Origin: Paramoeba atlantica
Lineage: Eukaryota > Protista > Discosea
NCBI GenBank assembly: GCA_977017575.1
Contig: CDRNVI010000069.1
Location: 186,001 to 250,000, forward strand
Length of the DNA: 64,000 nt
Direction: 5' to 3'
The notes beneath the pieces were generated by a model. That model worked only from the letters and a program-made list of their open reading frames with translations. It had not been told where the DNA came from and searched no databases. Position numbers and translations under genes: made by a program. Of this stretch, positions 12,527 through 45,494 are shown piece by piece (the first letter of the stretch is position 1; each line of letters starts with the position of its first letter).

Positions 12527-14250
12527 TTACATCCGAATTCGTACGGATATTTTGTCTTCGCTCAATGTAAAGTGTTCGGGATGAGATTGTAGGAAGTGAC
12601 AGACCCCACCTTTCATTCTGCGAAGGACCGTGCGTGCATCACTCGGTAGTTGCACACCGATCTCAGAGACATTCATTGGAAGGAGGGGTTGACCTAAGAA
12701 CAGTTTTCGAAGCTCTTGAAGCAGGACATCGTCATTGAAATACGGATTTTCTACCGTAGCGCTCGGGCTCGCATTGTCGTCCTCGGTGGCTCGACGTACA
12801 AGATACTCTTTTTCAAAAGTACTTTTTTCTTGCACATAACGCATGTTTTCCGTGACAACGACACGGTCGGGAAATTTCTGGAACCACTTTGCAAAAGTAC
12901 ACATACTGCATTAAGACCCTTCGTAACGTGGTGATACGCGGCTCTCTGTTCATCACTAATATTTTCCAATACGGCTTCCAGTAGACCTTTTAAAGGGACG
13001 CACATACCCTGTTCTGGTAGTTTCAGAAAAACCTGCTCCATTAAATTTTGATTCCAACAATCGAATTCCTCGACGCTCATTGACACTTCCTTATCTCGTG
13101 CTTCCTCCAAATCTCTAAACTCTGTAAAATCAGGTGTAGCACATGCTTGGTTAGCATATTCGCGGGCGATTTTATTTTCATTACTGTTAAACCTCTGTTG
13201 AAACTCCGTCTGGATAAGCGTCGTATAGGGTGCGAAGCTGCAAGGGGGACATATCTCGGGATGTTTTTCACGTATGCGACTTCGTATTCTGGGATGTTTC
13301 GAGTCTTCCATATTCATTTCAAACGCCTTAGGATATAGGAATGCAATGGTAGGTAAACGAAACGGTGCGGTATGTAGCCACGTCTTGCATGACGGAAATA
13401 AAAAAGTTTTACACGCGAAGGAAACAGGAACAAAGTGTGCTGGTAACCCACAAGCCAATAAAACAATAAATTCTCGAGACAACCCCAAGTGCTCGCCATC
13501 CGCAGGAGGAAGCTCTGTCGAGGAACAGCTTGGAATTCTTTTAATGTATATGACTTGGTGAACCGGCATGAAGCCTATACGACAATCCTTGCAAAGAAAA
13601 ACATATAATTTTCTTACAGGGGTTTTCTCCCATAATGCTTTCATCTCCGGAGCTAACTTCTTGACCAATGTCTCAAGCTGCACAAAATAGTTCGGAGCAA
13701 GCAGAAGCAAAGCAGATGCCAGACGTTTAGTTAACATCACACATTCCGTATCCCCAATATTAAACACATCCCTGGCGATAGCTTCAAAGTCTTTTCGCAG
13801 TAAGAAGGCCACCTTGGTGGGATTCCACTGCACCGTGTAATGCTCTGCAAGTGTATCATCACTTTGTATGGTTGTCAAGACTTCGCATGGAGGTCGGTTG
13901 TAGTAGAGATATGAAAAGCAATCAAGCCGCGCCCATCCCTGTTTTGGGACATATAGCTCAAGAAAACGCTTCAAATCACCTGGTGAGGGTAGAAAATTTC
14001 CGTTAGCGTCTACTCGACGTCGCACCTTTGTGCCGTCATGGCTCAGTTGAAACCCAGCGGGATATTCTTTCAAAAAATTTTGTATTGACCCAAACGAGAC
14101 GTCCAGCACGCCTTGCACTCTCTTAGGCAACTTCATCTGTATGGTAGAGACGGTAGATACTGAGTGGTAGGGAACGTTTTTAGCAATGCTATAGGCAATC
14201 TCATGAGGCAAGGTAATAGGAGAATGAAACCGTCGCTGTGAACGCATCAT
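12527..14250 (-). pseudogene. Repeated winged-helix-like family paralogue 1, with a -1 frameshift at ~12905-12910
   Basis: ORF 12751-14259 carries the family motif LACGLP..FPSCKTW..YPKAF. The family C-terminus (EKEYLVRRAT..NPYF..LPSDARTVLRRMKGGVCHFLQSHPEHF) is in ORF 12527-12904, whose frame has a TAA at 12911-12913. Confidence 0.8.
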
Positions 14251-14640
14251 TCTGTTCAACAGGACTCACATGTGAAAAGGGGTGCAACACTTATTCGAAT
14301 ATTTTAGAGAACTACAAGATTCCCTTTTCGAAGTAGAGTCCATAAACAACGCAAGTACATGTATGCCCGATGTTTAGCTATTTCTGTGAGGAAACGTCAC
14401 GGTCCCAATTCGAGCACATGTCAAGGAAGAAGGAACGAAGAAAACTTTTTTAAGATTTCATAGGGTGGACCACTACACTAGAAGTACATACACTAGAAGG
14501 GGAGGACTGGGAGGGTAAACACACTACATTCCATAAGGTATGTGTTATGATCAGCATAGCTACAGTATGACATAGCTATGAACGTCATAGTTATGTTTTT
14601 CTAGAATCGTATTGTTGAAAAAGCTTTCCTGTTACCCAAA

Positions 14641-16434
14641 CTACTGTACTTGATGGGATTCTTTTTTTAGATAAACTAGATGTGATTCACTATCATAAAT
14701 AAAGTGATCTGATTGCGACTGAATAAATTTCAAAACACCCCCGGCAGATCTCCGAAGTGCTGTCTGCGTTGCACGAGGCAAAGTGTTATGTATGTTGTAT
14801 ATGGAAATCGGTATTTTAGGACTAACAAGGAATAATTTACGAATCTCATTGAGTGAAGCATCTTCAGTGTAGTAAATATTCTGCTTCTGAGACGTGTCAT
14901 GTACCGCATCATCATCAGTGGCACGCCGCACAAGATAATCTTTCTCGTACCTTCGGTACTTGTCACAATATTGTATGCGTTCCTCCATAAAGAATTTACG
15001 AGGATTCTTTCGCAAAAGGCAAAAGAAGGATTCTCCATGTATAACTCCGGCTCGAAAGCGAAAATTCGGAGATCTTTCGACAGCTGAATTGAGGAACATG
15101 TGATACAAATCCCACGATGCAATGCTCTCCCCACTGTCCGGAAGTAACTCCCATATTATGTTGATCGCTTCTGCGCGATCAGCTGTATCTGCTTTTTGTG
15201 TGTCAGGCTTCCATTTCGTTATATCTTTAAATACTTTCAAACACGTGTCGGAGCAAACGGTTTCAGCAAAAGATTTTGCCTGACAGTTTTCCGGAAGGTT
15301 CAGTCGCCGAAAAAATTCCTCTTCGACACCTTCCCCATAGGGTGATTCATCACTGGGAGGACAAATTTCAGGGTGAGTTGTTCTCAAAAGACTTCGAACA
15401 AGATATGACGTTCCGAACAAACCAGTGCAGCATTTTTTGTCGAAGGCGCGTGGGAACAAAGAAACAATAGTAGAGAGACGAAATTCGCAGGATTTCAGCC
15501 ACGCTTTTACAGACGGAAATATATATTTATCTGCAACCTGTACAGCCACGAAGTTGTCTGGAAGGCTGCAGGCCAAAGACAACACCATTTTTAAAGGAAC
15601 GAAATATTCACTGTATTGCTCTGTGCAGCATGGAATATCCCTAACCTCGGGACGACGACGTACAAAGACTTCGCCGGTAGGTAGAAAAGTGGATATTTGA
15701 AATTTATCAAGGAAAGGATAGAAAAACCTGGGAGGATCTGCTTTAATTGTTCGCTGTACTTCAGCAGGGAGCCTCTTCTTCACCGCATAAAGGCTAACGA
15801 AATAATCTGGAATAAGTGACTCCATGATGTTGGAAGCAAATTTAGACATTAAAACCAAATTACTCGAGCCTATGGGATAAACTCCCTGGGCACGTTCCGT
15901 AAAACTACGTCGTGCTAAGAATGATGTTTTTAACACATCCCATTCGACCACGTATGCCTCGGATAAGGCATCGCTGCTTTGTATTCCAGATACCACGTAG
16001 CTGGGTTTTTGGTCATGGTATATTGAACAAAACTTGTCAAGACGGATCCATCCGTCTTCTGGAACGTACTGCTCCAAAAATTTCTCCAGGTCACCTGGTT
16101 GAGGAGTGCGACTGCCGTCTCCATCTAAACAAAGCCGAATATGACACTCATCTCGACTAAGTTGAAAAGCGGCGGGGTGTTTTTTCACGTAAGAAGCTAA
16201 ACTATTACCATATTCTTCGCTAAGTAGAGTTTTGATTTCGTTCTTCATTTTTGCATGTAGTCCCTGCACTGAGTCCTTTTTTGACCGGCGTAGAAAATAC
16301 ACTAAGACACATGCAATTTCACAAGACATTAAACGCTCCGGGGCTAATCTCACTAAAGACCTCCACATTGAAAGGTAGAGTAAGTATGAATTGTCGCATG
16401 CGGCTCTACTTTGTAAAATTAGATACACTGTCAT
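14641..16434 (-). CDS. Repeated winged-helix-like family paralogue 2
   Basis: Shared motifs LACSLP..FPSVKAW..FPRAF..HPEICP and TLPRATQTALRRSAGGVLKFIQSQSDHF. Likely start MWRSLVRL at 16368. Confidence 0.85.
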   Translation of the reverse strand: MTVYLILQSRAACDNSYLLYLSMWRSLVRLAPERLMSCEIACVLVYFLRRSKKDSVQGLHAKMKNEIKTLLSEEYGNSLASYVKKHPAAFQLSRDECHIRLCLDGDGSRTPQPGDLEKFLEQYVPEDGWIRLDKFCSIYHDQKPSYVVSGIQSSDALSEAYVVEWDVLKTSFLARRSFTERAQGVYPIGSSNLVLMSKFASNIMESLIPDYFVSLYAVKKRLPAEVQRTIKADPPRFFYPFLDKFQISTFLPTGEVFVRRRPEVRDIPCCTEQYSEYFVPLKMVLSLACSLPDNFVAVQVADKYIFPSVKAWLKSCEFRLSTIVSLFPRAFDKKCCTGLFGTSYLVRSLLRTTHPEICPPSDESPYGEGVEEEFFRRLNLPENCQAKSFAETVCSDTCLKVFKDITKWKPDTQKADTADRAEAINIIWELLPDSGESIASWDLYHMFLNSAVERSPNFRFRAGVIHGESFFCLLRKNPRKFFMEERIQYCDKYRRYEKDYLVRRATDDDAVHDTSQKQNIYYTEDASLNEIRKLFLVSPKIPISIYNIHNTLPRATQTALRRSAGGVLKFIQSQSDHFIYDSESHLVYLKKESHQVQ

Positions 16435-16822: not shown

Positions 16823-18550
16823 TTACGATTCCTTTAGATAAATTAGTGCCGAATCGCTTCCATGTGGTTCCATTCGAAACACTTTCGGATGGTTCGCGAT
16901 GAACTTACGCCATCCGCCCATAAAGCGAAGGGCTCTCCGCGCCTGACTCGGTAACATAAATAGAATGCCTGTAGGAGATTTTCCATTGCGGTCATTTTTG
17001 AGAAATGTTTCTCGAATGGCCTGAATGAGGGCCTCTGACGTGAGGTATGGGTTCTGTTGCCCTTGGCGATGCGATGTCTCTGCAGGACTCTGCTGCGCCG
17101 CCTTACTAACTATCCAGTCGTATGCACGACCCATTTGCACCTCCTCTACATGGAGTCGCTCTGGAAAACGTTTAACAAACTTCAGTAGTGAATTTCTATG
17201 TTTCAGTGTGATAGTGTTCTTGATCTTACGATATCGATCAGCGGGAACGAAGTCACGAAGACGAATCATTAAATCATACAATCGTATAGGATCATGGGAC
17301 TCATTAAGAACAAGATCTAGAGCATCCAATATTTCACTTGGTTCTAGTACGGGAGCATCTTTGCTAATCACAACGTCGTCTTTCCTTACCAAACGAAATA
17401 TTTTCCTTTGAAATAACTTGTCAGAAGGTTCGGAAACAAGTTCATTAAGCTCTTTAATTGTCTCCGGGCTCTGTTTCATCAGTTTTGCCTCAAACTCAGC
17501 TTCCGCTTCTAAAGTAAATGCCTGTTCGGTAGATGGCGCTAAATGTGGATACTTCATTCGCAGCGCTGAGCTGACTTTACCATACGGTTCTATATTAATC
17601 GCCTTGGGATACATTTGGGCGAGATCGGAAAGAGAAAATGCTGCACATTTTGCACCCCATTTCATTACGGAAGGAAATACAGCGCCCTGGGCGTAGAGAA
17701 CCGAGACCGGCGTGGTAGGGAGTGAGAACGCGAGCTTTAGCATGAGCTTTGGGTGTAAGTCGTAGGCCTCATAGATGGGCCACTTGTTTTCTTCTTCTTC
17801 AACCGAGCGCGTGGCGCCCCACTTCCGTACGTACGGGGGATCATTACGAAGGCAAGCCATTTCTAGCACTTCATCACAAAACCCTAGAGCCTGAGATACA
17901 TTTACGGAATTGTGCCACCTGTGCTCATCTAAATTGGCATCCATTTTCCCTTGTCGAAGTAGCATAGGAAACGGAACCCAAAAATTGGGCGCAAAGCTCT
18001 TGATGATTTTAAGAAGTGTCGGTGCCTTAATGCAAGTTGAGTTATCACCCAGCGAAACTCTCCCCCCAGTCGATTCCCAAAACTTCTTGCGTATAATGTA
18101 TTCCTTCTCGCTATTGGAGCATGCTTTTTGAAGATCAAAAATTTCAGCACAAGATGGGTCGTTTGATAGGTGTGAAATCACGTAAGACTTTCGCAATTTA
18201 GGGTGTAGTAGTCTACAAAAATCTTCAATTAGTAGGAATCCGAATTTCGGCACATATCTTTTCAATGCTTCACTTAACTGGGAGGACGAAGGAATGTGTT
18301 CGCGCACCTTCAAACGAACTATGGTTTCATCCCGATTCAAAAGAAACAATTCGGGGTAACGTTTAACAAATTTTATCATATCATACTGCTCAGCCGCAGC
18401 AACTTTAACAGGAACAGCAGCTTTACTTGTGATATTCGCTATAAATCGCTGGTTTTTCTCTGCGACTTTTAGCGTTTTTTGGAGCCACACTAATAAGTCA
18501 GTCGGATGGACAAGAGTGTCCATCCGAAAGCGCGACGAAATACGGAACAT
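16823..18550 (-). CDS. Repeated winged-helix-like family paralogue 3
   Basis: Presequence-like MFRISSRFR; LAFSLP..FPSVMKW..YPKAI; NPYL..LPSQARRALRFMGGWRKFIANHPKVF. Confidence 0.85.
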   Translation of the reverse strand: MFRISSRFRMDTLVHPTDLLVWLQKTLKVAEKNQRFIANITSKAAVPVKVAAAEQYDMIKFVKRYPELFLLNRDETIVRLKVREHIPSSSQLSEALKRYVPKFGFLLIEDFCRLLHPKLRKSYVISHLSNDPSCAEIFDLQKACSNSEKEYIIRKKFWESTGGRVSLGDNSTCIKAPTLLKIIKSFAPNFWVPFPMLLRQGKMDANLDEHRWHNSVNVSQALGFCDEVLEMACLRNDPPYVRKWGATRSVEEEENKWPIYEAYDLHPKLMLKLAFSLPTTPVSVLYAQGAVFPSVMKWGAKCAAFSLSDLAQMYPKAINIEPYGKVSSALRMKYPHLAPSTEQAFTLEAEAEFEAKLMKQSPETIKELNELVSEPSDKLFQRKIFRLVRKDDVVISKDAPVLEPSEILDALDLVLNESHDPIRLYDLMIRLRDFVPADRYRKIKNTITLKHRNSLLKFVKRFPERLHVEEVQMGRAYDWIVSKAAQQSPAETSHRQGQQNPYLTSEALIQAIRETFLKNDRNGKSPTGILFMLPSQARRALRFMGGWRKFIANHPKVFRMEPHGSDSALIYLKES

Positions 18551-19439
18551 GTTAACTAGACATCGCGCAAATACCTATAATAAACTTCCGAGTAGTAAGG
18601 TGGAAAAACCTTTTCACATGACTATTAACAATTTAGCATGATAACTATTAATAATTTTACCGCTATGGTTGCAGGTACTCGCAAAAGGGGTTTGTTTCGA
18701 AAAGAGGACAAATAAGTAGGGGGGCGGAGCTATGACAGTTAAGTGGGGGGAGTCACAGTTCGTGCATACTTAAAAAATACTGTTTACGAATCTTTATAGG
18801 TCAGCTTTAGTACCATCAGTAAAATAGTGTGTACTTTGTTGCTTGTCAAAATAGACGTATCATATGAAAATGTCCCTAAGGTATGCGGGCGCGAACGTGA
18901 CCACCGCAACAGCACCGGGAACGCAAGCGGCCACGCGCCTATTGTAGAAGAAGAAAATGTTGCATCAATTTTTGATTTATCTTCTGCGACATAGCAACAT
19001 GAAGCTGACGATGCCCTGTGGAGTCCGCGACGTACAATTACGCGTACAACCAAAAACCTGAAGAAATGGCATTGCCGGTAAAAAGGGAATATTTTTGTAC
19101 CAACTCTTCCGATTGACAGAAAACAATTTTTGTAATATTCGAATAAATTCCAATAATTTATAAGAATCTTTCATTACAAAGGAACTGTTATGCAAAGAAA
19201 GTTAGCACCACCTTTAAAATCATTTTTCGTGCAACAACATGAGCCTTGACTGCGAAGGGTATGAAACATTTCAGTGAATAAAATCCTACCATTGGCGTAC
19301 AGGATGACCATTCCTTCCTAGGATGTGTAAAAACTCTTCAGCGCCGTGCGAAGGTGAAAGGAAAATAAATATCAAAATATTTAAGACTGTGCAAGAAAAT
19401 TTAAAGAAATCTTCTTCGGTTTGCCTAAAAAAGAACCTA

Positions 19440-20019
19440 TAGTCCGCGTCATATTGATCCCCCCCTCAGGAAATTTTAGTTTTTTTATCCGATTTTGCTC
19501 ATCTTTGCAGTATTCGAGAGATCTCGTTCCGGTAGGAAAGTTTTTTGCCGCAATAAAACGTAAGGAGGGGGGTGCCTCCAGGAGAGAATCCCAAAGTTAG
19601 GAAAAAACAGAAAAAGTTAGGAAAGAATTTCAATGATCACATGACTCTGATACATTCAATTCAATCATAATCATGTGTGATCGCCGCTTAGCTACAAAGC
19701 GTTTTTTTGAGGAATTCGTATTTTTCATTTAACTAAAGGTATTTTTAAGGGATTCAGACGAGGATACGTGCGGTTTCGGCCTCTTCGGGGTGCTGGAAGA
19801 AGAAAAAGTCATGAAAAAATAAGAAAGTTTTACATCTATTCAAGATTTTAGTAAAAAAACGTGTAATTTTCCACTATTTCGAAGCGTCTGGCTAAAAGGT
19901 AAAAACAGTGGCGAAGTACTTTTCTATGGGAACGAGATCTCTCGAATGCTGCATAGATGAGCAAAATCGGATAAAAAAGCTAAAATTTCCTGAGGGGGGG
20001 ATCAATATGACGCAGACTG
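19440..20019. mobile_element. MITE, ~90-bp TIRs (CAGTCTGCGTCATATTGATCCCCCCCTCAGG..), TA TSD
   Basis: 19440-19530 is the near-perfect reverse complement of 19930-20019. TA at 19438-39 and 20020-21. Confidence 0.9.
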
Positions 20020-20493
20020 TATAAAGGGGGGAGGGGTCGAGGCTATTATAAACAGGGGGGGTACAGTACTTGTATGTACTTACGGGACATACGGGTATGT
20101 TCCGGTGACGGGAACGTTTTTAGTAATTACAGCGCAGGCATGTCTCCACATCCACAATGGTAGATGCTGCGTCTTCTGGTGCTTGACACACGAGACAACG
20201 CCTAGGAGCCAACACCGAAAAAACGCTTTCTTTTCACATTCCGTAGAGTAAAGCTGCGGAAGAGAATCTTGCCCAGACATAGCTCTACAGGAGGAAATCA
20301 TGATACGGAGTTTGATTGGAAAATTATTTTCTATTCTTTTGTATTCAGAAATCTCAAAAGAGTACTAATTTCAAAAATATAGATTAAAGAAAGATTTTTT
20401 TTGAAAATAATTTACCCAGTGCAACCTGTGTTACCCAGTGTTACCCATAGAAACTTCTAAAAAGGCGGACTTGCAGAAGGTCCATTGATAATA

Positions 20494-21226
20494 CAGGGGT
20501 GTAAATTTGGATGTGGGGGGGTCTAAAATTTGTAAAACTTGGCCAATTTTGAAAAATAATAGCGCATTCGAGAGCTCTCGAATTGGGTTCATGAACGTGC
20601 AAGTACAGCATCTGCATTAATTAGATTTTCAAGTGCACATACAAAGATTTTTTTTTTTTGGGAGACAAAATCTTGCATTTTTCACAGTTTTTCTGATTTC
20701 TCCCCTGATTCATGCCCCAAAGACAGGGTCGTGGGCGATAACCCGAACACAAAGACTACGAAAGGGCTTATTCTTCGCCTGCGCACGTAGAAGCAGGCTG
20801 TTGCATGGTTCTTGTTGCCGATTACGAAACAACATAATCTTTTTCTCGCTAAAAATGTATGTTCCATAGTGGGCAACTTCAAAAATGATTGAGCCCCTCG
20901 GAATCGTGCAGATTCGATCGAAGCAGCGTTTCAAGGCCCCTGAAAATGCCAAGAAGAGCTTTCGAAAGCGATGCTGTATTGTGATTGAGATTAACCGACG
21001 ATAATAGCCATTATTAATTTCTTTTTCGATATGTGCTATTGATTTAGAAAGTTGCAAATAGCGTTTGGGGGCTCTTTGTCTAGGGGGCAATACCCCCTTG
21101 TGCCTAGTTCGGCCTTGCTACATTCATGAGCCCTGTTCGAGAGCTCTCGAATGCGCCATTATTTTCCAAAATTGGCCAAGTTTTACAAATTTTAGACCCC
21201 CCCCCACATCCAAATTTACACCCCTG
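20494..21226. mobile_element. MITE, CAGGGGTG family, ~100-bp TIRs, TA TSD
   Basis: TA-CAGGGGTGTAAATTTGGATGTGGGGGGGTCTAAAATT.. and its reverse complement ending CACCCCTG-TA. TIR related to the ends of the Tc1-like element at 32612-34617. Confidence 0.92.
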
Positions 21227-21240
21227 TATATCTTCGGGAA

Positions 21241-21305
21241 ACTCATGCCGTGCGCTTCGCGTTGAAAACTACCACCGCGTTTAACGAAGAGCCTAAAAAA
21301 GAAAT
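21241..21305. repeat. Half copy of the ~115-bp hairpin repeat
   Basis: actcatgccgtgcgcttcgcgttgaaaactaccaccgcgtttaacgaagagcctaaaaaagaaa. Confidence 0.85.
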
Positions 21306-21873
21306 TACCTTTGCAGATTCGTGGAGATCTCGAGGAACATTACTTGGGGAAAATATTTGCTTTTCGTTCGAAAAGCTATATTCTGGAAAAGCTGTATTCT
21401 GAAGAAAATTAACTGCGAAAGTCAAATTTCTGAGAAAAAAGATGCTCACATTTTCTTGAAGAAAACTCTTAAGAACACTCGAAGATCATAAAAAAAAGAT
21501 ATTTTACAAAGTAGTACAACATATCAGATGATGTCGACATGGAATGTGTTTGCCGTCGTATCGAGTGCACAATTCTAATCTTTTTTTGAACGATGCATGC
21601 AATATAGCACCCTTCTGCCGACATTCGAAATCCGACTTTTGTGCATGGGAAATCACTCGTAGGCATGAATGAAGGCCTACTGAACGTATTGGGTAGAGAA
21701 TACGACTCCAACCACACCATTCTTTCGACACGAAAAGGCCCCTTGGGGTCCAAAAAATACTTTTCATCGTTTTCAGTCAAAAATGGGTCATTTTTGGAGG
21801 CATACCACGGCTCGAAGGGGTATCTTGCGAAAACTGCGGAGAAAGCTAGTATAGGTCCTAAACTATCAAAATA

Positions 21874-22231
21874 CTATGAACCCCCCCTTTATACTTCGCC
21901 CATTTTGAGCAGTAACGAAGTATAAAGGGGGGGCCTGGAGGTTTTCCCCGCTGTAAAAAGAAAACCGCGCCGCGAAGCGGCGCGGCTCATCCTGTTTTCC
22001 TGTCTTTCCTTTTATATCACCTTCCATTTCTAGAAGGGAAGACTTAGAACGTTTTTTCTAAAACATACGTTTTTTTAAAACGTTTTTCAAAACGTGTTTT
22101 TTCTAAAACAAATTGAAAAAATACGAAAATTAAAACACAATCGTCCCCCCTTCGGGGGGGGGGGCACACAAAAAACGAAGTATAAAGGGGGGGGGGGCTG
22201 ACCAGCGAAGTAGAAAGGGGGGGGGTCACAG
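21874..22231. mobile_element. MITE (CTGTGACCCCCCCTTT-type TIR), TA TSD, with empty site visible elsewhere in the window
   Basis: The flanks ctatcaaaa-TA-[element]-TA-caata rejoin to the uninterrupted ctatcaaaaTAcaata at ~33351-33366 in the homologous repeat (21590-22320 vs 33100-33460). Confidence 0.85.
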
Positions 22232-23580
22232 TACAATATATGTAGGCAAAACCATTTTGGAGAATATTTTGCCATTGTGTTCGCCAAGTTGAATTTTTTT
22301 TCGAAAAATCCGAAATTGGAGAGATCGCGAGCGGCCCCTGATAAATGGGGGGAAGGTAGTGGTTGTTTTGGGGGAAATGAGAGGCCGAACGCACGGAGGG
22401 GCCGGACGAGCCAATGAACTCATGCCTATTTTTGTGCTACAAAGGTGGTATGCATTATCAATGTGCTATATGCATTATCAATGTATTATATGCTTCAGAT
22501 ACCTGACTTATGTGACTTCCATAATTCTGCATAGCAAGTCCCAAGTCCTGACCACAACCACCCAACCCACCAAAGGATCATCACATTACGTCGTGAATCA
22601 CATTACGTGGATCATCACATTACGTAGGTGAAATATGGTTTTCCACCCATGGATGAAAAACCTACACATTATCAATGTGCTATATGCATTATCAATGTGC
22701 CGCTTAGTATGAATATCAATGTGCCCTTACTGAAATTATTCTGATATATTATTAAAAACCATGACATAAAAAAGAGTTTTTCAAAATCGTTTCACATATT
22801 GTGTTTTGAGAGTTTGGGACCTTTACTAGCATTCTACGCCGTTGTTTTCACAAAATACCCCTTCTTGAAGCCGTGGCACGCCTCCCAAAGTGACCCCCCA
22901 AAATAGGTGTCCAGGCAAAACCTGGCAAAACCTGACAGGTTTCAACCCTCTTAATATGCCATGTTTGTGTATCATTTCGATACAGATTTTGACGTAGGAT
23001 TGGGAGCGCGCGAGGATGTCATAATAGTCGCTTCGCTAAACGCGGTGGTTGTTTTCAACATACTATACAGGGGGGCCACGAAAACTGACTAGCTTCGCAT
23101 TTTAGCCTCGTGAGGCCGTTTGAGCTAATTTTTGTTGCAAACGAGAGATCTCGTTCAGAATATCGTGTCTACGCTATTTAGAACCCGTTTATAAATATTT
23201 ATAAGTCTGATCTTTTACATTTCGAAAATACTGAAATTTAAGACGATTTATTTTGCAAAAAGCACAAAAAATAGTAAAAAAGTTGTTTTTCTCTTCTTTT
23301 TTTTCACTATGGGCAAGCGGCATAGATTAAACCGTCGCCAATTGTCTCCAGAGCAGTCTTCGTATTCCACACGCATTGTTTGCGCACACGAAAGACATCG
23401 TGGTACAAGTATTGAAGACACAATCGCGGTTCGGAGAAGTCAGCTCCGACAGTTGCGCGTCTGATTATGATGAGTAATACCTAAATTCGGAACGTCTGTA
23501 CATATTTCTTTTTCATCAATAGTCTGTACATACTCGTTTATGCTATACTCCTCCTCTCATTGATTTTTATAAATATAAAC

Positions 23581-23940
23581 CACTGTCCGGGTTAATATTC
23601 CTGGTAGGAATATTAAGAAGGTATAGGAATATTAAGAGGTATAGGAATATTAAAAAATTAGCAGAAAAGGACCAAAACATTTTCGCGCCGCTTCGCGGCG
23701 CGGTCTTTGCTCTTGTGTTCGTTTTTGGTTCTTTAGGGACTGTGTGCGCGTTGGGCTTGCTATTTTGATGAAAAAATCATCCAAAAAAGGGGAATATTGA
23801 AGGATCATTTTGGTGGATCTCAAGCAAAGACATGGTAGGTGTCAGGGAGAGAGGGGGGTAGGAATATTAAGCACCATTGGGACACTTAATATTCCTGGAA
23901 GGAGTAATACGGGGGTATAGGAATATTAACCCGGACAGTG
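23581..23940. mobile_element. MITE with 22-bp TIR CACTGTCCGGGTTAATATTCCT; TSD unclear
   Basis: Perfect inverted ends at 23581-23602 and 23919-23940; internal ggaatattaa motif repeated. Confidence 0.8.
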
Positions 23941-24790
23941 ATATAAATTATAACAAAAAAGAAAATATATATTATATTTATAATTATAAAAATCAATGAG
24001 AATGTTTTCCAAAGATACCGGAGACCCGCCAGTAAACGACCCCCGGTAAGAGAGATTGGCTCTGGAGGCTGGCTGGTTGGCGGGGCTGAGCGGGCGGGGG
24101 TTGTTGGACGGGTAAGGGTGGGTGAGCGGGGTGAGGGTTATTGGGAGGGCTGTGATGGCTGTGGTACGGAGTTGTCTGGACAGAAAATCAATGCGCGCAT
24201 GAGTAAAAGAGGTCTTAAACAGAGTGGGAAACCGAGTTCAACTCGCTTTCGAAGACGTGTGTGCGAAACACAACGTGTGTGCGATAAATATGATATATCG
24301 ATTACTTGTAGAAGGGGGAGGAGCATTTACAATCAAAACAACCCAGGCTAAAATGGAAGACGGAGATACTCGTCCTTGCGCCCCCTCCTTCATCTAAGGT
24401 CTTGAGCGTCACACACGTCCAGTTAAAATTTGGCCTTTGCAGGTGCATTACCAGAACATGTTGAAGAAGTATCTAACGAAACCAAAGCGCATACAGGTAC
24501 ATCAGGGCCCAAACTCTCCAAATACGCTAGAGGAGTTAATTTGGGAATCTTTTATTTTCACCCACGAATTTTCAGGTTTTCATTTCGAAAACTCACCCGA
24601 CACGAAATCAGGCCACAAATCGGGCACGACGAAATAACCTACCGAGGGAATAGTGCCTCCCTCAATATTTTTAAGCATGTCGTGAATGCTTTGTGCGAAC
24701 AGAATCAAATTTATAAATTTCACAATTCTTATTTTTTTTTTCGAAAATTCTGTCTTGCCATTTATAAAAATCAATGAGAGACAGAGTATA

Positions 24791-25514
24791 CCGTATACCC
24801 CCAGTAAGAGAATGGGATTTGGGTCGAAATGGCCAAATCTCTCTTACTGGGGGGGTATGCCTTTTTGGCCAGTTTCCTCTTTTCTCCCAACTTTTTTGAC
24901 TATTTTTTTGTATTTTTTCTTCGGAAAACGTGTTAAAACGCTTCTTTGGGTTACCCCCGAGGCCCCCAACATGCAAACACCCATCCCCTACCTATTTGGC
25001 TCCCAAGCCAAATCTCTCTTACTGGGGGTCAGCCCAAAAAGGGCCAAATCTCTCTTACTGGGGGGGTATGCCTTTTTGGCCAGTTTCCTCTTTTCTCCCA
25101 ACTTTTTTGACTATTTTTTTGTATTTTTTCTTCGGAAAACGTGTTAAAACGCTTCTTTGGGTTACCCCCGAGGCCCCCAACATGCAAACACCCATCCCCT
25201 ACCTATTTGGCTCCCAAGCCAAATCTCTCTTACTGGGGGTCAGCCCAAAAAGGGCCAAATCTCTCTTACTGGGGGGGTATGCCTTTTTGGCCAGTTTCCT
25301 CTTTTCTCCCAACTTTTTTGACTATTTTTTTGTATTTTTTCTTCGGAAAACGTGTTAAAACGCTTCTTTGGGTTACCCCCGAGGCCCCCAACATGCAAAC
25401 ACCCATCCCCTACCTATTTGGCTCCCAAGCCAAATCTCTCTTACTGGGGGTCAGCCCAAAAAGGGCCAAATCTCTCTTACTGGGAGGGGGGTACCTTACT
25501 GGGGGGGTATACGG
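24791..25514. mobile_element. TA-flanked MITE (TIR CCGTATACCCCCAGTAAG) inflated by an internal 211-bp tandem triplication
   Basis: TA at 24789-90 and 25515-16. Identical blocks recur at 24930, 25141 and 25352 (period 211). Confidence 0.9.
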
Positions 25515-25554
25515 TAGTTTCCAAAGAAAATAATAAAAAAATAAAAAAACCCTC

Positions 25555-26066
25555 TTCTACCTCTAGGGAGGGCACTCCGCCCATCATCAGAGCCACGATA
25601 CTGGAAGGGATTGCGGCTGCAGTCAACGTCTCCAGCTCCCCTCATAAGGATACCGAGCTGGTCCAATGTACCGGTTCCCAACAGGGGTCGACCCCAACCA
25701 CCCAGGTCGCAAACACGGAGATCTAACCCCCTCCCCCGAAAATCTGGCGGAACTATTGGGGAGGGGCTCTCTCCGCAAGCTTTACGCGGTTCAATGCCCC
25801 GCGTGGAGAGAACATGTGGCTAGCGTTTGTCACGATTCCCTTGACAAATCAGTCGAAGGAAAAGCGGCGATTGCATGGAATCTTCTACTTGCAGTCAATA
25901 GATTCCTCTCTTACCCTGATGATAAACTGTCACAACGACAGTTAGCACGCGAACTCCGTGTGCGTGCTCGTCTGGAAGGATCGGAAACCTCGGCTCCGAC
26001 CCCCAACCCTGCGAATGGCTCCCCCGTGTGTGTTACAAAACGGGTGGAAGAATTATCTAGGGCGGG
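25555..26066 (+). mobile_element. Internal fragment of a related CRE subfamily (pre-RT region)
   Basis: TILEGIAAAV and PSPENLAELLGRGSLRKLYAVQCPAWREH..AWNLLL..KLSQRQLARELR..ANGSP match 36500-36940. Truncated after EELSRAG. Confidence 0.9.
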
Positions 26067-34558: not shown

Positions 34559-34608
34559 CAATTATAAATCATTTTTACGAATTTTAGACCCCCCCCACCA
34601 CGAGTTTT

Positions 34609-36864
34609 TCACCCCTGTATGTCAGGGCCTCGACCGTTGTCGAACCTGGGTTCGCAAAGATCTGGGGAGAAACCATAGTTGATTAGGAGGTTTCGGAAGG
34701 TTTCCTTAACTACTTTATGTCGAGAGGCTTGGGTCTTGCCCCTGACCTTCTTGCAGTCCAGCGCTTGGACGCAAAAATCCTCGTTCCTGAGGGTGGCGCC
34801 GCACACGCAGTGTAGTTCAGGTTCGGAGGTCGGGGAGACCAAGTACCGAAGGCGGGCCGCTGTTTCCCACTCGGGGTCCCGCATGTAGTACTCCGGCCTG
34901 TTCGGCCACGCATTCATCCATTCGGTAGAGTGGATGTTTTGAATCTGTCTCATACAGACCAAATGCGTGGCCGAGGGGGCCTTCTGGATGGCCGCCTCAC
35001 AGAAGCTGCGTCTCAGCTCCTTGGCTGGCGTACCCTGAGTGAGTCCTTGGAGGGCGTTTTTGGCTTTGCCCTGCATGTCCCCACCTTTGTGCTCGAAAGG
35101 AATGGTTCCTAGGAAGTCCGCCGTAAAAAGGGGATTTGAGAACGGCGACTTTCCAGGGGGGGCCATCCCTCCGAGTAAGGCTTCAGAGAACGCCTTGATG
35201 GCACAATCAATTTGTTTATTGGCCATCTTGGTGACCGGGGGTTCGTGCGTCCGCACAATATAATTCCAGTGCGGGCTGCCGCATAGCCGCAGGAGGGGTA
35301 GGGCGCATTGCCTGGGGAGGTCCTTCAGTTTCCCCAGGAAGGAGGCCACCTTGGGTGCCTTGGAGAGCACCCATTCCTCCTCAACCGACTCCGAAGCTCC
35401 AATGTAAGCTCCAAGGAGCTTAACCCCGCCCGGAGAGTGCACCATTCTGGTACCTTTGAAAGCCGAGTATAGGTCATCCCGGCGGGTGGCGACCTTACTC
35501 TTGGCAGTGTTTAGCTTCAACCCAAGGAATTTGATTTCTCCTTGGAGGGCATCGAGGGCCTCCCCGCACACCATGGGCTCCCCAGCGAGGGTGACGTCAT
35601 CGAGGTAAGCCCATAATTTCAAGGAGCTGGGGAATTTGGCCGCCACTCGAGAGATGGCCCCCTGTACCCCGATCGCGAACAGGATAGGGGCGAGCGGGTC
35701 TCCCTGTTTGACCCCCCTGGTGCTCATGAGGACATTGCCCTCGCCCAGGTGAAGAGCGCTGGGTTTCCCGTATCCGAGGAGGGTAATGCCCTCGAGGGGG
35801 AGAAGCTTGGGGTTCCCCCGTATGGCCCTGAAAATAGCTGACCTCGAGATGCTGTTAAAGGCATTCTCGAGGTCCGCCGCGACAATAACCTCGTCGGGCC
35901 TGTCTCGGAAGTGATCGCGTACCTCGTACACGATGTGTTCACACCCTTGGGTGTATTGGGCCCCGAATTGGAGCCCTTGGAAGACGTTTGGGAGGTGTTC
36001 GCGCACCCTTTCAAGGGCGAGGAGTCCCGCCAGTTTCAGGAACACTTCGCCCATGGTAATTGGGCGACAGGTCGAGTGATGCCCCGCGGGGGCACCCGGT
36101 TTGGAAAACAGTTTAAGGGTGGCCCCCGTTATTATCTCCATCATGGAGTTAGGGAGGGTGTTCGTAATGATACCGTGGACAATCCACCTCACACATTCCC
36201 GGGGATCATCCTCCATAAGGGCCGGGGCCAGTAGCTCCTTGGTCCACCCGGACGGTCCCGGGGCACAAAGCAGAGCCAAGCCTCGGACCTTCCGGGCCAC
36301 ATCCGCCGGGGACGGGAGCGCCCCGTGGACGTCTTGGTCGTAGCGATACAGGCCGGAGGTATATGGGCCCCCGGTCGGATGGAGGCGTCTTGCGTAGTAT
36401 GAGGCCGCATAAGGGTTAGCGGGGGGATCCAAAGGGGCTTCGAGGATTTTCGCTGCTCTGGAGAAAGAGCCCACTCTAACCAGTTCCTCAGCGCGCTTGA
36501 GCGCCGAGGTGGGTGAACCGTTAGCTTGTATAGGCATGGGGGACATGCTCTCTGACCCCTCGAGGAACGCGCGCTGGCGTAGTTCCCTGGCCATTTGCTT
36601 CTGAGAGAGCTTCTCCTCCGGGAAGAACAGGAAGCGTTTTACCGAGAGAATGAGGTTCCAAGCGGTCACAATCTTCTGGTCAGGGGATTTAGATGGGAAC
36701 CTACGGCAAACATGTGCTAAGTGTTCTCTCCACGCAGGGGTCTGGACTGCATAAAGTTTGCGCAAAGAGCCCCTTCCCAACAGTTCCGCCAGGTTTTCGG
36801 GGGACGGGGCGTGGTCGGTTCCTTCTGTATACGCGCTCTGTGTGCATGGGGGCGTAACGGACAC
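34609..36864 (-). CDS. CRE reverse transcriptase / endonuclease reading frame (truncated by Tc1 insertion)
   Basis: APGPSGW, RPITMGE, ADLENAFNSISR, GVKQGDPLAP, WAYLDD, CVCG..CVQALDC..SRHKVV..GPD. The last codons run into the TIR. Confidence 0.95.
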   Translation of the reverse strand: MSVTPPCTQSAYTEGTDHAPSPENLAELLGRGSLRKLYAVQTPAWREHLAHVCRRFPSKSPDQKIVTAWNLILSVKRFLFFPEEKLSQKQMARELRQRAFLEGSESMSPMPIQANGSPTSALKRAEELVRVGSFSRAAKILEAPLDPPANPYAASYYARRLHPTGGPYTSGLYRYDQDVHGALPSPADVARKVRGLALLCAPGPSGWTKELLAPALMEDDPRECVRWIVHGIITNTLPNSMMEIITGATLKLFSKPGAPAGHHSTCRPITMGEVFLKLAGLLALERVREHLPNVFQGLQFGAQYTQGCEHIVYEVRDHFRDRPDEVIVAADLENAFNSISRSAIFRAIRGNPKLLPLEGITLLGYGKPSALHLGEGNVLMSTRGVKQGDPLAPILFAIGVQGAISRVAAKFPSSLKLWAYLDDVTLAGEPMVCGEALDALQGEIKFLGLKLNTAKSKVATRRDDLYSAFKGTRMVHSPGGVKLLGAYIGASESVEEEWVLSKAPKVASFLGKLKDLPRQCALPLLRLCGSPHWNYIVRTHEPPVTKMANKQIDCAIKAFSEALLGGMAPPGKSPFSNPLFTADFLGTIPFEHKGGDMQGKAKNALQGLTQGTPAKELRRSFCEAAIQKAPSATHLVCMRQIQNIHSTEWMNAWPNRPEYYMRDPEWETAARLRYLVSPTSEPELHCVCGATLRNEDFCVQALDCKKVRGKTQASRHKVVKETFRNLLINYGFSPDLCEPRFDNGRGPDIQG

Positions 36865-38956: not shown

Positions 38957-38989
38957 GGGGGTAAAGTAACGAAGAAAGAGGAAGTAAAT

Positions 38990-40560: not shown

Positions 40561-40634
40561 AAAAGGTATGATATCATCATATCGTACCTTAGATTGTACC
40601 TTGTTGCCTTTTTCTTTATACCTTGTTGATCTAC

Positions 40635-43422: not shown

Positions 43423-43517
43423 TAATAAATAATGAAAATCGTTTCTAATACTGTACCCCTAATTCTCCACAAATTAATTACCAGTGCGCAAGGTCGCGTT
43501 AAGATTTAGTGAATCAG

Positions 43518-45494
43518 TCAGGATGCTCCAAGATGGAGAGAGGAACGTTCACGACGCGCAAGCTTCTTTCCTGCTTCGGTTAATGTGAGATAGACGTTCG
43601 TTGTATATGACTTGGCTTCGCGTTCCGTATTTATAATGTCACCGAAATTTGCCGCAACGCGCAAGGCACCCCCATACGAATATAACGCCTTCACTGCCAA
43701 CCGAGGCAGGAGAGCGTACAATAATGTGGGACATATTCGTTTCTCTTTTGCCTGAAGCACACACTCAGCAATGGCGGCCTTAAGGTTGTGGGGATCCATA
43801 TAGGGATTTGGTTCAGAGGTTTGAGTGTGAGGCGCCCGTATAGGAGCCGTCGATGCTTCACATTCCGATGCGCTACGCAGTGCGACATGAAGGTCGTATC
43901 GGATCCCACGGTCGTGCGGCATATGGACTGTCTCTTCCTCTAGTCGAAATATGTCCGATCGCGCCTCAAGAAATTTATCCAAACTCGCGTGGCGCGTCGA
44001 TTTATGTCCCGCTCTTTTTCTCTGGTGCGGTATGCCGCACCGATATCCGGCTTTGAAACGGGCCCAATCCTCGCTGCTAAGTGCTTGTTGAATCTTAGAA
44101 ATCAATTGCGAAACTAAAATCAAATGAGAGATGGATAAATGGCCTTTTAGAATGGTGATCACTTCGTCCGAACTCATGGGTACCAATTCCTTCGAATCGA
44201 GAGTAGCTTGCTCTCTTTTCAGGATTTCAAATGAAGGTTTACTAATATAGCTGAACAGTTTATTTGTAAACTCTGTGTGTACTTCTGAATATAGAAGATA
44301 CACGAGTCTATTCTCCTCACTTTGGTCAAACTTATCCCTGACTACACCAAACCGCTTCACCACATCACTTGAAAATTTGGAAACAATGTTACAGGAACAG
44401 CAGTCAGAGGAGTCGAGCGCGGGTTCCTTGCCATGGTACGCGAAAAGCTTCGAATACCCAGACACCCACATACCCGAGGAGTGCCTTGAGCGAACTAGGA
44501 ACTCACGCACCGTCGGGAAGTTCTTCCGATGCGCCATTGACATCGTGCGTGGCCACACGACACTGAAAGCAAGCAGTGCCACCACCAGCAACGGGAGGCC
44601 GTACTCGAGCGCATACGTCACATCGGGCTGAGAAATCACCCGTTCCCAGGGCTGTTGCGGACACGCAGAGTCTCTCCCGAGTGCGTAGAGCACTTCCGCG
44701 GTAATCTCGCTGGCATCTGCCTCCGGAAGCTGTCGTATCCCACGCACCCACACCTTGGACTTTGGGTGGTTATCAAACTGCGTCACCATTGCCTCTCTTT
44801 TGGGGTCCAGCATCTCCGCAAATCGCCGGGCACCAAGCCTACCAATACCTACTTGCAAGTCTACCGGTACATGCCCGAGAACCTGATGCAGCGGGACATA
44901 GTAACTTGGAAGATACTTCGCGAACAGCGATTTATATAAACATGCCAATAGCATTTCTAAGATTTTACCATGGTGGTGCGGGGAGGCGTAGGCTGTCACC
45001 CACACCCGGCGTCCAACTAGAAAATGTTCGACGCGGTGAGGTTGGGGTTGGCCATCCGGGTTGCGGGCGAAATGGTAAGTCGCAAACATCTGGGATAGTA
45101 ATTCCGAGGACTCCAACACGGAGAGTAGTTTCCGGAGGGAGTAGTCCCCAAAATGCATAGAGATACAGGAGAGAGGGAACAGCCCTTGGGCGGGGACCAG
45201 TTTGTTAAATGCGGTCCCAAGCTCGGTTTCAGACACCGCGTCGGGTGCCTTCACCTCATATCCTTCTAAGAGGTGCTGCTGGGTAGGGTTTCGCCGGACG
45301 TAGCACTCGTGTTCTTTGAGAAATAAGTCTACGTCTTTCCAGACGAGTTGAATAACCTGGACGGGGCGATCACCAAGGATTCTTTCCAGCCCTAGGGTCA
45401 GGGAATTGCAGAGCTTGAAGGGTCCATGGGTATCACACCAATTTCGAATACGTTGTATAAGGTGTAGTCCAATCGCTCTTTTCGCACGCCCCAT
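43518..45494 (-). CDS. Repeated winged-helix-like family paralogue 6 (most divergent)
   Basis: LAFSV..NFPTVREF; LDKFLEARSDIF; NPYMDPHNLKAAI..LLPRLAVKALYSYGGALRV. No clear presequence. Confidence 0.75.
   Translation of the reverse strand: MGRAKRAIGLHLIQRIRNWCDTHGPFKLCNSLTLGLERILGDRPVQVIQLVWKDVDLFLKEHECYVRRNPTQQHLLEGYEVKAPDAVSETELGTAFNKLVPAQGLFPLSCISMHFGDYSLRKLLSVLESSELLSQMFATYHFARNPDGQPQPHRVEHFLVGRRVWVTAYASPHHHGKILEMLLACLYKSLFAKYLPSYYVPLHQVLGHVPVDLQVGIGRLGARRFAEMLDPKREAMVTQFDNHPKSKVWVRGIRQLPEADASEITAEVLYALGRDSACPQQPWERVISQPDVTYALEYGLPLLVVALLAFSVVWPRTMSMAHRKNFPTVREFLVRSRHSSGMWVSGYSKLFAYHGKEPALDSSDCCSCNIVSKFSSDVVKRFGVVRDKFDQSEENRLVYLLYSEVHTEFTNKLFSYISKPSFEILKREQATLDSKELVPMSSDEVITILKGHLSISHLILVSQLISKIQQALSSEDWARFKAGYRCGIPHQRKRAGHKSTRHASLDKFLEARSDIFRLEEETVHMPHDRGIRYDLHVALRSASECEASTAPIRAPHTQTSEPNPYMDPHNLKAAIAECVLQAKEKRICPTLLYALLPRLAVKALYSYGGALRVAANFGDIINTEREAKSYTTNVYLTLTEAGKKLARRERSSLHLGAS

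What the first reader, a model, noticed from the sequence alone, without database searches (positions are those of the whole stretch)
12527..45494. Six-member expansion of ~600-aa multi winged-helix-like proteins, mostly with mitochondrial-type presequences
Seen: six highly diverged paralogues (12527-14250, 14641-16434, 16823-18550, 26787-28730, 28914-30698, 43518-45494). They share LAxxLP..FPSVxxW..(Y/F)P and a terminal NPY..LPxxAxxAL..GG..F....P..F. Each appears built from about six modules ending in L/FxxFxxxxPxxF, which resembles OST-HTH/LOTUS winged helices. Inference: this is a lineage-expanded mitochondrial RNA-binding family, possibly tied to kinetoplast RNA editing, guide-RNA handling or mitoribosome assembly. 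The ORFs stay intact inside a TE-rich region, which suggests selection. I cannot name this family.
Basis: partly seen in the sequence, partly recalled or inferred. Interest (0 to 1): 0.76.

Follow-up and report, generated by a model that had tools for sequence, protein, structure and literature searches.

The report
Tandem six-winged-helix protein gene family
Six neighbouring genes in an undescribed kinetoplastid encode old, diverged copies of an unnamed protein built from six predicted winged-helix modules, some of them LOTUS/Egalitarian-like, so it is probably a nucleic-acid (most likely RNA) binder, perhaps in the mitochondrion; full-length relatives with a named source all come from the Perkinsela group.

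Summary
Six minus-strand paralogues lie at the stated coordinates (20-34% identity; leave-one-out profile E 1e-16 to 1e-75). Copy 1 is broken on this haplotype by a 5-bp insertion at 12897-12901; the other haplotype is intact.

AlphaFold2 models show six winged-helix (WH) modules.
- Module 5 matches solved LOTUS domains best among 48,161 chains (TDRD7, Z 9.8, 2.2 A, 76/76 residues).
- Modules 1, 5 and 6 match Egalitarian-type WH repeats profile-to-profile (91-98%).
- No member reaches a Pfam cut-off.

Full-length relatives with a named source are all prokinetoplastids (Perkinsela, Papus, Apiculatamorpha); the rest are unnamed environmental contigs. None turned up in trypanosomatids or bodonids, although sources were checked for only 30 of 75 hits.

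The array is old. Several copies have their own Perkinsela-type orthologues, and the order array - eIF1A - X - AlaRS is conserved.

RNA binding, mitochondrial location and any editing role remain inference. They rest on basic, acid-poor N-termini, pI 8.3-9.4 and LOTUS/Egl precedents.

The scan saw this before on other DNA: note s1-405759 almost certainly describes the allelic haplotig (C34, 99.3-99.9% identical).

Verdict: a real, undescribed family, a new variant of a known domain kind. Interest 0.55.

The parts
12527..14250 (-). Paralogue 1. It is broken on this haplotype by a 5-bp insertion at 12897-12901, so module 6 (12527-~12900) is out of frame with the rest (12751-14250).
   Evidence: the intact 575-aa allele is L009:1468-3195:-
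14641..16434 (-). Paralogue 2. The ORF is 597 aa, but the likely true start is Met24 at 16365. It is the closest relative of paralogue 1.
   Evidence: the allele has CAA>TAA at codon 8
16823..18550 (-). Paralogue 3 (575 aa), the copy that was modelled. Predicted WH modules in window coordinates: M1 18311-18505, M2 18089-18286, M3 17822-18043, M4 17567-17752 (carries the family signature LAFSLP...FPSV..W...YP), helical linker, M5 17102-17341 (LOTUS-like), M6 16835-17038.
26787..28730 (-). Paralogue 4 (647 aa from the ATG). It groups as an orthologue of P0009 from a Perkinsela-type genome.
28914..30698 (-). Paralogue 5 (594 aa).
43518..45494 (-). Paralogue 6 (658 aa), the most diverged copy. It groups as an orthologue of Perkinsela KNH05382.1.
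   Evidence: (E 1.7e-16 leave-one-out)
18600..26700 (.). Gene-free gap between copies 3 and 4, filled with dispersed repeats. These include a ~740-bp MITE-like element with ~110-bp inverted ends at 20491-21229, and others at 19438-20026 and 23941-24802.
34609..36864 (-). Reverse-transcriptase ORF of a retrotransposon, in the gap between copies 5 and 6.
   Evidence: RVT_1, E 2e-17
5673..12410 (-). Syntenic anchor downstream of the array: eIF1A (11190-12410), a 649-aa protein (8963-10912) and alanyl-tRNA synthetase (5673-8663). The same order follows the family genes in a Perkinsela-type contig.

Best explanation
The window carries an old tandem array of six paralogous genes inside one same-strand (polycistronic-type) gene run. 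Each encodes a basic protein of ~575-660 aa with this layout: a short basic N-terminal leader, four winged-helix modules (M1-M4), a helical linker, and two more modules (M5-M6).

M1, M5 and M6 are sequence-related to each other and to Egalitarian-type (LOTUS-like) winged helices. M5 and, more weakly, M3 are structurally closest to LOTUS domains. M2 and M4 are diverged WH modules; M4 carries the family's own signature.

Most likely working (inferred, not shown): the leader sends the protein into the kinetoplast-bearing mitochondrion. There the WH modules hold structured or G-rich RNA, and each paralogue serves different transcripts or a different RNA-processing complex. This would be comparable to the PPR, OPR, HPR and PORR organellar RNA-binding families of other lineages.

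Shown: homology of the six copies, the predicted fold, the domain kinship, the taxonomic range, synteny and retention.
Inferred: RNA as the ligand, the compartment, and the division of labour among paralogues.
For: Paralogy.

Six WH modules:
- Model of copy 3, pLDDT 75.
- Model of M3-M4, pLDDT 84, pTM 0.82.

LOTUS-like fold:
- In the search of 48,161 chains that does not use Foldseek, the only four chains with Z >= 8 are TDRD7 (9.8, 2.2 A, 76/76), TDRD5 (9.4), Tejas (8.6) and Egalitarian (8.6).
- M3's best hits are MARF1, TDRD5 and TDRD7 LOTUS domains at Z 5.7-6.1.

Sequence kinship:
- hhalign gives M1~M6 95% and M5~M6 91%.
- Against WH_Egal repeats: M6 98.1%, M1 96.8%, M5 91%.
- The family profile hits proteins that carry certified WH_Egal repeats, e.g. 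P0038 at E 3e-9 in 1.8 billion proteins; 13 of 29 distant hits carry PF23713.
- Recurrent sub-threshold WH_Egal hits occur in different modules of different members.
- The language-model look-alike is also WH_Egal.

RNA precedent: Egl domains resemble LOTUS and bind RNA stem-loops (PMC13186709). Plant mitochondrial MNU1/2 carry LOTUS domains (PMC9181182).

Leader: N-termini of 23 members from several prokinetoplastid genomes are basic and acid-poor, often starting MFR/MLR/MYR/MRR. Their sequence is not conserved, but their composition is. Clear cytosolic neighbours have early acidic residues.

Charge: pI is 8.3-9.4 for the six copies.

Retention:
- Orthologue pairs with Perkinsela-type genomes, SH-aLRT 99-100.
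- Conserved synteny array-eIF1A-X-AlaRS.
- Allelic pN/pS is 0.22 for copies 2-5, from only 3 nonsynonymous and 4 synonymous changes.
- Homologues of Papus and Apiculatamorpha come from transcriptomes, so relatives are expressed.
Against: - No member reaches the Pfam gathering score for WH_Egal (best 22.7 against 27 bits) or gives any OST-HTH hit.
- A profile of M5-M6 finds no solved LOTUS or Egl sequence in the PDB.
- M2, M3 and M4 show no significant sequence repeat signal. Their WH nature rests on AlphaFold2 models built from shallow alignments (8 and 22 rows).
- WH matches of M1, M2 and M6 at Z 6-7 are to generic, mostly DNA-binding WH proteins.
- Mitochondrial targeting was not tested with any predictor or data. 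The neighbour control is small (13 proteins) and several neighbours have similar N-termini.
- Two family branches (the L015 and L022 types) are acidic, pI 5.0-6.3.
- No homologue was found in any solved trypanosome mitochondrial complex, so nothing ties the family to editing or the mitoribosome.
Confidence: 0.45

Rival explanations
1. The proteins are mitochondrial DNA-binding proteins that organise or replicate the very large kinetoplast DNA of prokinetoplastids, rather than RNA binders.
For: - Winged helices are classic DNA binders.
- M1, M2 and M6 match forkhead, MarR, IclR and TFIIIC WH domains at Z 6-7.
- The best whole-chain Foldseek hits are the multi-WH, DNA-bound TFIIIC tauB subunits, E 7e-4.
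- pI is basic.
- N-termini are presequence-like.
Against: - The only matches that stand clear of the background (Z >= 8) are LOTUS and Egl domains, which are known to bind RNA or helicases, not DNA.
- The TFIIIC matches have TM-scores of 0.15-0.17 and reflect only a string of WH modules.
- Sequence kinship is to WH_Egal, not to a DNA-binding WH family.
Confidence: 0.2
2. The proteins are cytosolic or nuclear RNA-binding regulators. Kinetoplastids rely on post-transcriptional control, and the basic N-termini would be ordinary protein ends rather than import signals.
For: - Known LOTUS and Egl proteins (TDRD5/7, Oskar, MARF1, Egalitarian) are cytoplasmic.
- No targeting predictor was run.
- Several unrelated neighbours have similar N-termini.
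- In the model the first helix of M1 starts at residue 16, which leaves only a very short leader in copy 3.
Against: - The basic, acid-poor N-terminal composition is kept in 18-19 of 23 members across genomes, although the sequence itself is not conserved.
- Leaders are longer in copies 4 and 5 and in the Perkinsela members.
- LOTUS domains do occur in organellar proteins (plant MNU1/2).
Confidence: 0.25
3. The WH array is a protein-protein scaffold, like UFL1, cullin, ESCRT-II or kleisin-partner WH repeats, with no direct nucleic-acid ligand.
For: - Foldseek and VIA also list UFL1, ESCRT-II, ScpB, Nse1/3 and cullin WHB.
- Extended LOTUS domains bind DEAD-box helicases rather than RNA (reference 44 cited in PMC13186709).
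- The most conserved part (M4) is not LOTUS-like.
Against: - Those matches are weak (Foldseek E > 1e-3, Z 4-6).
- The basic pI and the WH_Egal kinship point to nucleic acid.
- M5 shows no extra C-terminal helix of the helicase-binding 'extended' LOTUS type in the model.
Confidence: 0.1

Closest known systems
Egalitarian N-terminal 'Egl domains' (Pfam WH_Egal, PF23713)
   Same: - Tandem winged helices with one extra helix.
- Profile-profile probability of 91-98% for modules 1, 5 and 6.
- Reciprocal profile hits.
- Structural Z 8.6-8.8 over M5+M6.
- Egl domains contact RNA stem-loops.
   Different: - No member passes the Pfam cut-off.
- There is no exonuclease-homology domain and no BicD or dynein context.
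- It has six modules instead of three.
- It carries a presequence-like leader.
- It is known only from prokinetoplastids.
LOTUS/OST-HTH domains of TDRD5, TDRD7, Tejas, Oskar and MARF1 (PF12872)
   Same: - These are the best structural matches of M5 (Z 9.8, 2.2 A, full domain) and of M3 (Z about 6).
- Tandem LOTUS arrays are known in TDRD7 and, from my own knowledge, in MARF1.
- They share the G..(F/L)...(F/L)....P..F signature.
   Different: - There is no Pfam OST-HTH hit at E <= 1.
- No solved LOTUS sequence is found by the profile.
- There is no Tudor, NYN or RRM partner domain.
- M2 and M4 are not LOTUS-like by sequence.
Organellar RNA-binding repeat families (PPR, OPR, HPR; plant PORR, PF11955; plant MNU1/2 with LOTUS domains)
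   Same: - A nuclear-encoded, multi-paralogue family of repeated small nucleic-acid-binding modules behind an organelle-type leader.
- PORR gave partial hits in 2 of 29 distant hits that also carry WH_Egal.
- MNU1/2 show that LOTUS domains are used in mitochondria.
   Different: - This is an analogy only. There is no PORR, PPR or NYN match in any member.
- Organelle import and RNA binding are untested here.
Multi-WH DNA- or ribosome-associated proteins (TFIIIC tau138/tauB, RPC82/RPC62, SelB C-terminus, UFL1)
   Same: A string of four or more winged helices. These are the top whole-chain Foldseek hits, E 7e-4 to 4e-2.
   Different: TM-scores are 0.1-0.17, there is no sequence similarity, and the domain order and partners differ.

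Membership tests
WH_Egal (PF23713) | Pfam model match at or above the gathering score (27 bits) | tested here: not met
   The best scores are 22.7 bits (copy 1 allele), 19.6 (copy 3) and 12-15 for the others. Five of 22 family members reach E <= 0.01, and none reaches the cut-off.
WH_Egal (PF23713) | Profile-level homology to certified WH_Egal repeats | tested here: met
   hhalign against 42 repeats seeded on P0038 (Pfam E 1.5e-123, 9 repeats) gives M6 98.1% (E 1e-13), M1 96.8% and M5 91%. Caveat: these repeats come from proteins that were first picked up by the family profile.
WH_Egal (PF23713) | Binding of double-stranded RNA stem-loops | not testable with these tools
   Needs binding assays. 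The precedent is PMC13186709.
OST-HTH/LOTUS (PF12872) | Pfam model match at or above the gathering score (23.8 bits) | tested here: not met
   No OST-HTH hit at E <= 1 in the nine members scanned. Only an environmental relative, P0029, reaches 20.8 bits.
OST-HTH/LOTUS (PF12872) | LOTUS fold: winged helix-turn-helix with an added helix, superposing over the whole domain | tested here: met
   M5 matches TDRD7 3rco at Z 9.8, 2.2 A, 76/76. TDRD5, Tejas, Oskar and MARF1 follow, and these hits rank first among 48,161 chains. M3 is weaker, Z 5.7-6.1. All of this rests on predicted models.
OST-HTH/LOTUS (PF12872) | Sequence similarity to solved LOTUS domains | tested here: not met
   A profile of M5-M6 against all PDB sequences found no LOTUS or Egl chain at E <= 10.
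PORR (PF11955) | Pfam model match | tested here: not met
   No hit in any member. Only two distant WH_Egal proteins match part of the PORR model.
Mitochondrial presequence-bearing proteins | N-terminal basic, acid-poor, amphipathic leader that directs import | tested here: inconclusive
   The composition fits in most of 23 members. The control set is small and mixed. No predictor, proteome or localisation data were available.
Known trypanosome mitochondrial RNA machinery (editosome, RESC, mitoribosome and its assembly factors) | Sequence homology to a component with a solved structure | tested here: not met
   Whole-family and M5-M6 profiles against all PDB chain sequences gave only chance-level hits.

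The most novel reading that the evidence does not exclude
Prokinetoplastids may have evolved their own organellar RNA-recognition family from LOTUS/Egalitarian-type winged helices. It would be a functional counterpart of PPR, OPR, HPR and PORR proteins. Individual paralogues, and the related ~3,200-aa giant with repeated half-units, would each handle particular mitochondrial transcripts, guide-RNA duplexes or helicase partners in a mitochondrion known for heavy RNA editing.
Probability: 0.3. Interest if true: 0.72.

Novelty: new variant of a known kind. Interest (0 to 1): 0.55.

Why it matters
Prokinetoplastids (Perkinsela, Ichthyobodo and the free-living Papus and Apiculatamorpha) are the earliest-branching kinetoplastids. 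They have very large kinetoplast DNA and edited mitochondrial transcripts. Almost nothing is known of the proteins that serve this organelle outside trypanosomatids.

A family of at least eight full-length members plus one giant per haploid genome is a concrete candidate for lineage-specific organellar nucleic-acid handling. It is conserved in gene order with Perkinsela-type genomes, and no trypanosomatid counterpart was detected.

It also extends the LOTUS/Egalitarian winged-helix class to a new six-module architecture and a new part of the eukaryotic tree. In addition, it shows that three GenBank names of Perkinsela members have no domain support: 'FNR-like protein FLP', 'multifunctional fatty acid oxidation complex subunit alpha' and 'Tetratricopeptide repeat-containing protein'.

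Tried and rejected
- Word-indexed protein search with copy 3 and with a 14-row family alignment returned only the genome's own proteins.
- Pfam gave no hit above cut-off. Stray weak hits (SNAPC1, CDT1, DUF3218, DUF7669, GCFC) were dismissed as chance.
- The whole-family profile against PDB sequences gave RicF, a P-loop protein and C-1027 apoprotein at E 0.1-3. The M5-M6 profile gave PDS5B at E 5e-4 with i-E 0.047. All were judged spurious.
- Rfam found nothing in the window.
- Literature searches for LOTUS, OST-HTH or winged helix together with Perkinsela, Prokinetoplastina, kinetoplastids or Trypanosoma mitochondria, and for PORR with winged helix, found no description of the family. A search for Perkinsela locus tags was uninformative.
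- A TFIIIC-like reading was rejected: TM 0.15 and no sequence signal.
- The allele-based selection test has too few changes to separate copy 1 from the rest (Fisher p = 0.27).
- The careful tree did not finish, so the quick IQ-TREE tree was used.
- The giant relatives have no Pfam domain.
Full report
**1. What is there**

All long ORFs between 5.6 and 63 kb lie on the minus strand, as in a kinetoplastid polycistronic unit.

They align over their whole length at 20-31% identity to copy 2. The conserved central motif is LAxxLP...FPSVxxW...YP, and the C-terminal motif is NPY...LPxxAxxAL..GG..F....P..F.

- Pairwise BLASTP among copies 1-5 gives E 1e-11 to 1e-66.
- Copy 6 is marginal pairwise, but a profile made without it finds it at E 1.7e-16.
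- The other leave-one-out values are 1e-53 to 1e-75.

The paralogy is therefore real.

**2. State of the genes**

The assembly (45.7 Mb, 248 contigs) holds a second haplotype of this locus on contigs C34 and C25, 99.3-100% identical.

- *Copy 1:* on the window's haplotype it carries a 5-bp insertion at 12897-12901. This puts the last module out of frame. The other haplotype has an intact 575-aa ORF.
- *Copies 4 and 5:* the other haplotype has 1-bp length changes in a C7 run (copy 4, codon 69) and a T5 run (copy 5, codon 195). These could be real or assembly errors.
- *Copy 2:* the other haplotype has a stop at codon 8 of the long ORF, so copy 2 probably starts at Met24, which also aligns with the start of copy 1.

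Allelic substitutions are few. Copy 1 has 6 nonsynonymous and 1 synonymous change (pN/pS 1.7). Copies 2-5 pooled have 3 and 4 (pN/pS 0.22). The difference is not significant (p = 0.27).

The gaps between the genes are full of mobile DNA:
- MITE-like elements with ~110-bp inverted ends, with dozens of ~90% copies elsewhere;
- a retrotransposon with a reverse-transcriptase ORF.

No decayed extra family copies were found in the gaps.

**3. Organism**

The neighbouring alanyl-tRNA synthetase is closest to those of the free-living prokinetoplastids Apiculatamorpha (PhF-6, 52%) and Papus (PhM-4, 50%). Next come Perkinsela and Trypanosoma (48%), Leishmania (46%) and Neobodo (45%). The genome is thus a kinetoplastid, nearest to Prokinetoplastina but distant from every sequenced member.

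**4. Fold**

*Whole copy 3.* An AlphaFold2 model of copy 3 (8-row alignment, mean pLDDT 75, pTM 0.41) shows six units of three to four helices followed by a beta-hairpin. They lie at residues 16-80, 89-154, 170-243, 267-328, 404-483 and 505-572, with a helical linker at 347-391.

*M3-M4.* A second model of residues 160-400 (22-row alignment, pLDDT 84, pTM 0.82) confirms M3 and M4 as a compact pair.

*Foldseek.* With the whole model it lists only multi-winged-helix proteins: TFIIIC tauB, UFL1, Egalitarian, RPC82, SelB, TDRD7 and ESCRT-II.

*VIA-align without Foldseek, 48,161 chains.* The only chains with Z >= 8 all align to M5 or M5+M6:

| Chain | Z | Note |
|---|---|---|
| TDRD7 LOTUS | 9.8 | 2.2 A, 76 of 76 residues |
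| TDRD5 LOTUS | 9.4 | |
| Tejas LOTUS | 8.6 | |
| Egalitarian | 8.6 | |

- M3's best hits are again LOTUS domains (MARF1 6.1, TDRD5 5.8, TDRD7 5.7). M3+M4 together resemble the tandem WH of ESCRT-II. These values are in the 'middling' range.
- M1, M2 and M6 match generic WH domains at Z 6-7.

**5. Sequence kinship of the modules**

Profile-profile comparison of the six module alignments (23 family members) gives M1~M6 95%, M5~M6 91% and M1~M5 58%. M2, M3 and M4 are not significantly similar to any other module.

The family profile, searched against 1.84 billion representative proteins, gave 75 hits. The distant ones match mostly M5-M6. Thirteen of the 29 scanned carry Pfam WH_Egal; one Branchiostoma protein has nine repeats at E 1.5e-123.

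Against an alignment of 42 such repeats, M6, M1 and M5 score 98.1%, 96.8% and 91%.

Pfam itself gives only sub-threshold WH_Egal hits. They recur in different modules of different members. There are no OST-HTH hits, and a profile of M5-M6 finds no solved LOTUS sequence.

The Egl domains are described as winged helix-turn-helix folds with an added helix that closely resemble LOTUS and contact RNA stem-loops (PMC13186709).

In short, the modules belong to the LOTUS/Egl-like branch of winged helices, but the proteins are not members of either Pfam family by the curated cut-offs.

**6. Range and age**

Of the 75 hits, the sources of 30 were looked up. Every named full-length relative comes from one of:
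- Perkinsela sp. CCAP 1560/4 (KNH07776, KNH06186, KNH09733, KNH03646, KNH05382, KNH05188);
- Papus;
- Apiculatamorpha.

The rest are unnamed ENA or JGI contigs. No trypanosomatid, bodonid, diplonemid or euglenid protein appeared, although such proteomes are in the searched collection (one search shows them for AlaRS).

Within this genome, profile searches find the following per haplotype:
- the six copies;
- two more distant full-length members, of 741 and 596 aa;
- a 3,191-aa protein with at least three tandem M1-M4 half-units;
- two weaker partial matches.

A quick maximum-likelihood tree pairs copy 6 with Perkinsela KNH05382, copy 4 with P0009, the 741-aa member with P0017, and the 596-aa member with Apiculatamorpha and Perkinsela proteins (SH-aLRT 99-100). 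Copies 1 and 2 form a pair of their own.

In a 986-kb Perkinsela-type contig, two adjacent family genes (P0013, P0009) are followed by eIF1A, a homologue of the window's 649-aa protein (E 9e-10) and AlaRS. This is the same order as in the window.

The array is therefore ancestral to these lineages and has been kept. This is better evidence of selection than the intact ORFs alone.

**7. Function**

Nothing here tests function directly.

*For a nucleic-acid ligand:*
- the WH/LOTUS/Egl kinship;
- pI 8.3-9.4 in the six copies.

*For RNA rather than DNA:* only LOTUS and Egl matches stand out from the WH background.

*For the mitochondrion:* 18-19 of 23 members from several genomes start with a basic, acid-poor stretch, often MFR, MLR, MYR or MRR. 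Its sequence is not conserved but its composition is. Clearly cytosolic neighbours (AlaRS from its ATG, a GCFC-like protein, PCIF1, eIF3L) have early acidic residues. From my own knowledge, short leaders of this kind are typical of trypanosomatid matrix proteins.

The control is small, some neighbours look similar, and no predictor was available. LOTUS domains do occur in plant mitochondrial MNU1/2 (PMC9181182).

No sequence link to any solved trypanosome mitochondrial complex was found.

My estimates:

| Reading | Probability |
|---|---|
| Mitochondrial RNA-binding family | about 0.45 |
| Mitochondrial DNA binder | 0.2 |
| Non-mitochondrial RNA binder | 0.25 |
| Pure protein scaffold | 0.1 |

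**8. Novelty**

No paper in the searchable library describes the family.

Three GenBank names of Perkinsela members have no Pfam support: 'FNR-like protein FLP', 'multifunctional fatty acid oxidation complex subunit alpha' and 'Tetratricopeptide repeat-containing protein'.

The domain type is known. The six-module architecture, the leader, the taxonomic confinement and the tandem, syntenic array are not. I rate it a new variant of a known kind.

The scan has met this before. Note s1-405759 (five genes, 18,162 letters, 'another piece') almost certainly describes the allelic haplotig C34:244-262 kb, and its reading agrees with mine. I re-derived each point independently here.

Noticed in passing
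G000:C7:45070-50073 (allele G000:C65:378035-383029); protein P0018: A 3,191-aa ORF contains at least three tandem copies of the family's N-terminal half (modules 1-4) and has no Pfam domain. Proteins of similar size exist in Perkinsela (KNH04395.1, 3,579 aa) and in other Perkinsela-type contigs.
   Followed up: partly
window 20491-21229, 19438-20026, 23941-24802: There are three dispersed repeat families in the gap between copies 3 and 4. The first is ~740 bp with ~110-bp terminal inverted repeats and has dozens of ~90% identical copies on many contigs (MITE-like).
   Followed up: partly
window 16413 (copy 2, codon 8); 28524 (copy 4); 30114 (copy 5): Differences between the haplotypes: CAA>TAA upstream of Met24 in copy 2, and 1-bp homopolymer length changes that would frameshift copies 4 and 5 on the other haplotype. 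They may be real heterozygous lesions or long-read homopolymer errors.
   Followed up: partly
L027:8086-17647 (ENA ERZ25074155, 986-kb contig): A Perkinsela-type genome keeps the gene order: two family genes, eIF1A, a homologue of the window's 649-aa protein, then AlaRS. The block is syntenic with window 5673-30698.
   Followed up: yes
GenBank KNH07776.1, KNH05382.1/KNH05719.1, KNH05188.1 (P0011/P0076, P0023/P0080, P0026): Perkinsela family members are named 'FNR-like protein FLP', 'multifunctional fatty acid oxidation complex subunit alpha' and 'Tetratricopeptide repeat-containing protein'. A Pfam scan finds none of these domains, so the names look like annotation errors.
   Followed up: yes
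window 45769-47613, 54353-55744, 61812-63251, 4812-5435 (minus strand): Several unrelated neighbours also begin with basic, acid-poor N-termini (for example MRSKSATFFLSRR and MLRRTRLRRL). One is a pseudouridine-synthase homologue. They may be further mitochondrial proteins, and they weaken the N-terminus control.
   Followed up: no
model me12d2d937f78, residues 383-490: Module 5 also aligns at Z 6.4-6.7 (15-18% identity) with proteins of the flowering-plant mitoribosome (9evs chain 1r) and the Toxoplasma mitoribosome large subunit (9g6k L0, 9i05 Xb). This is within the generic WH range and was not pursued.
   Followed up: no
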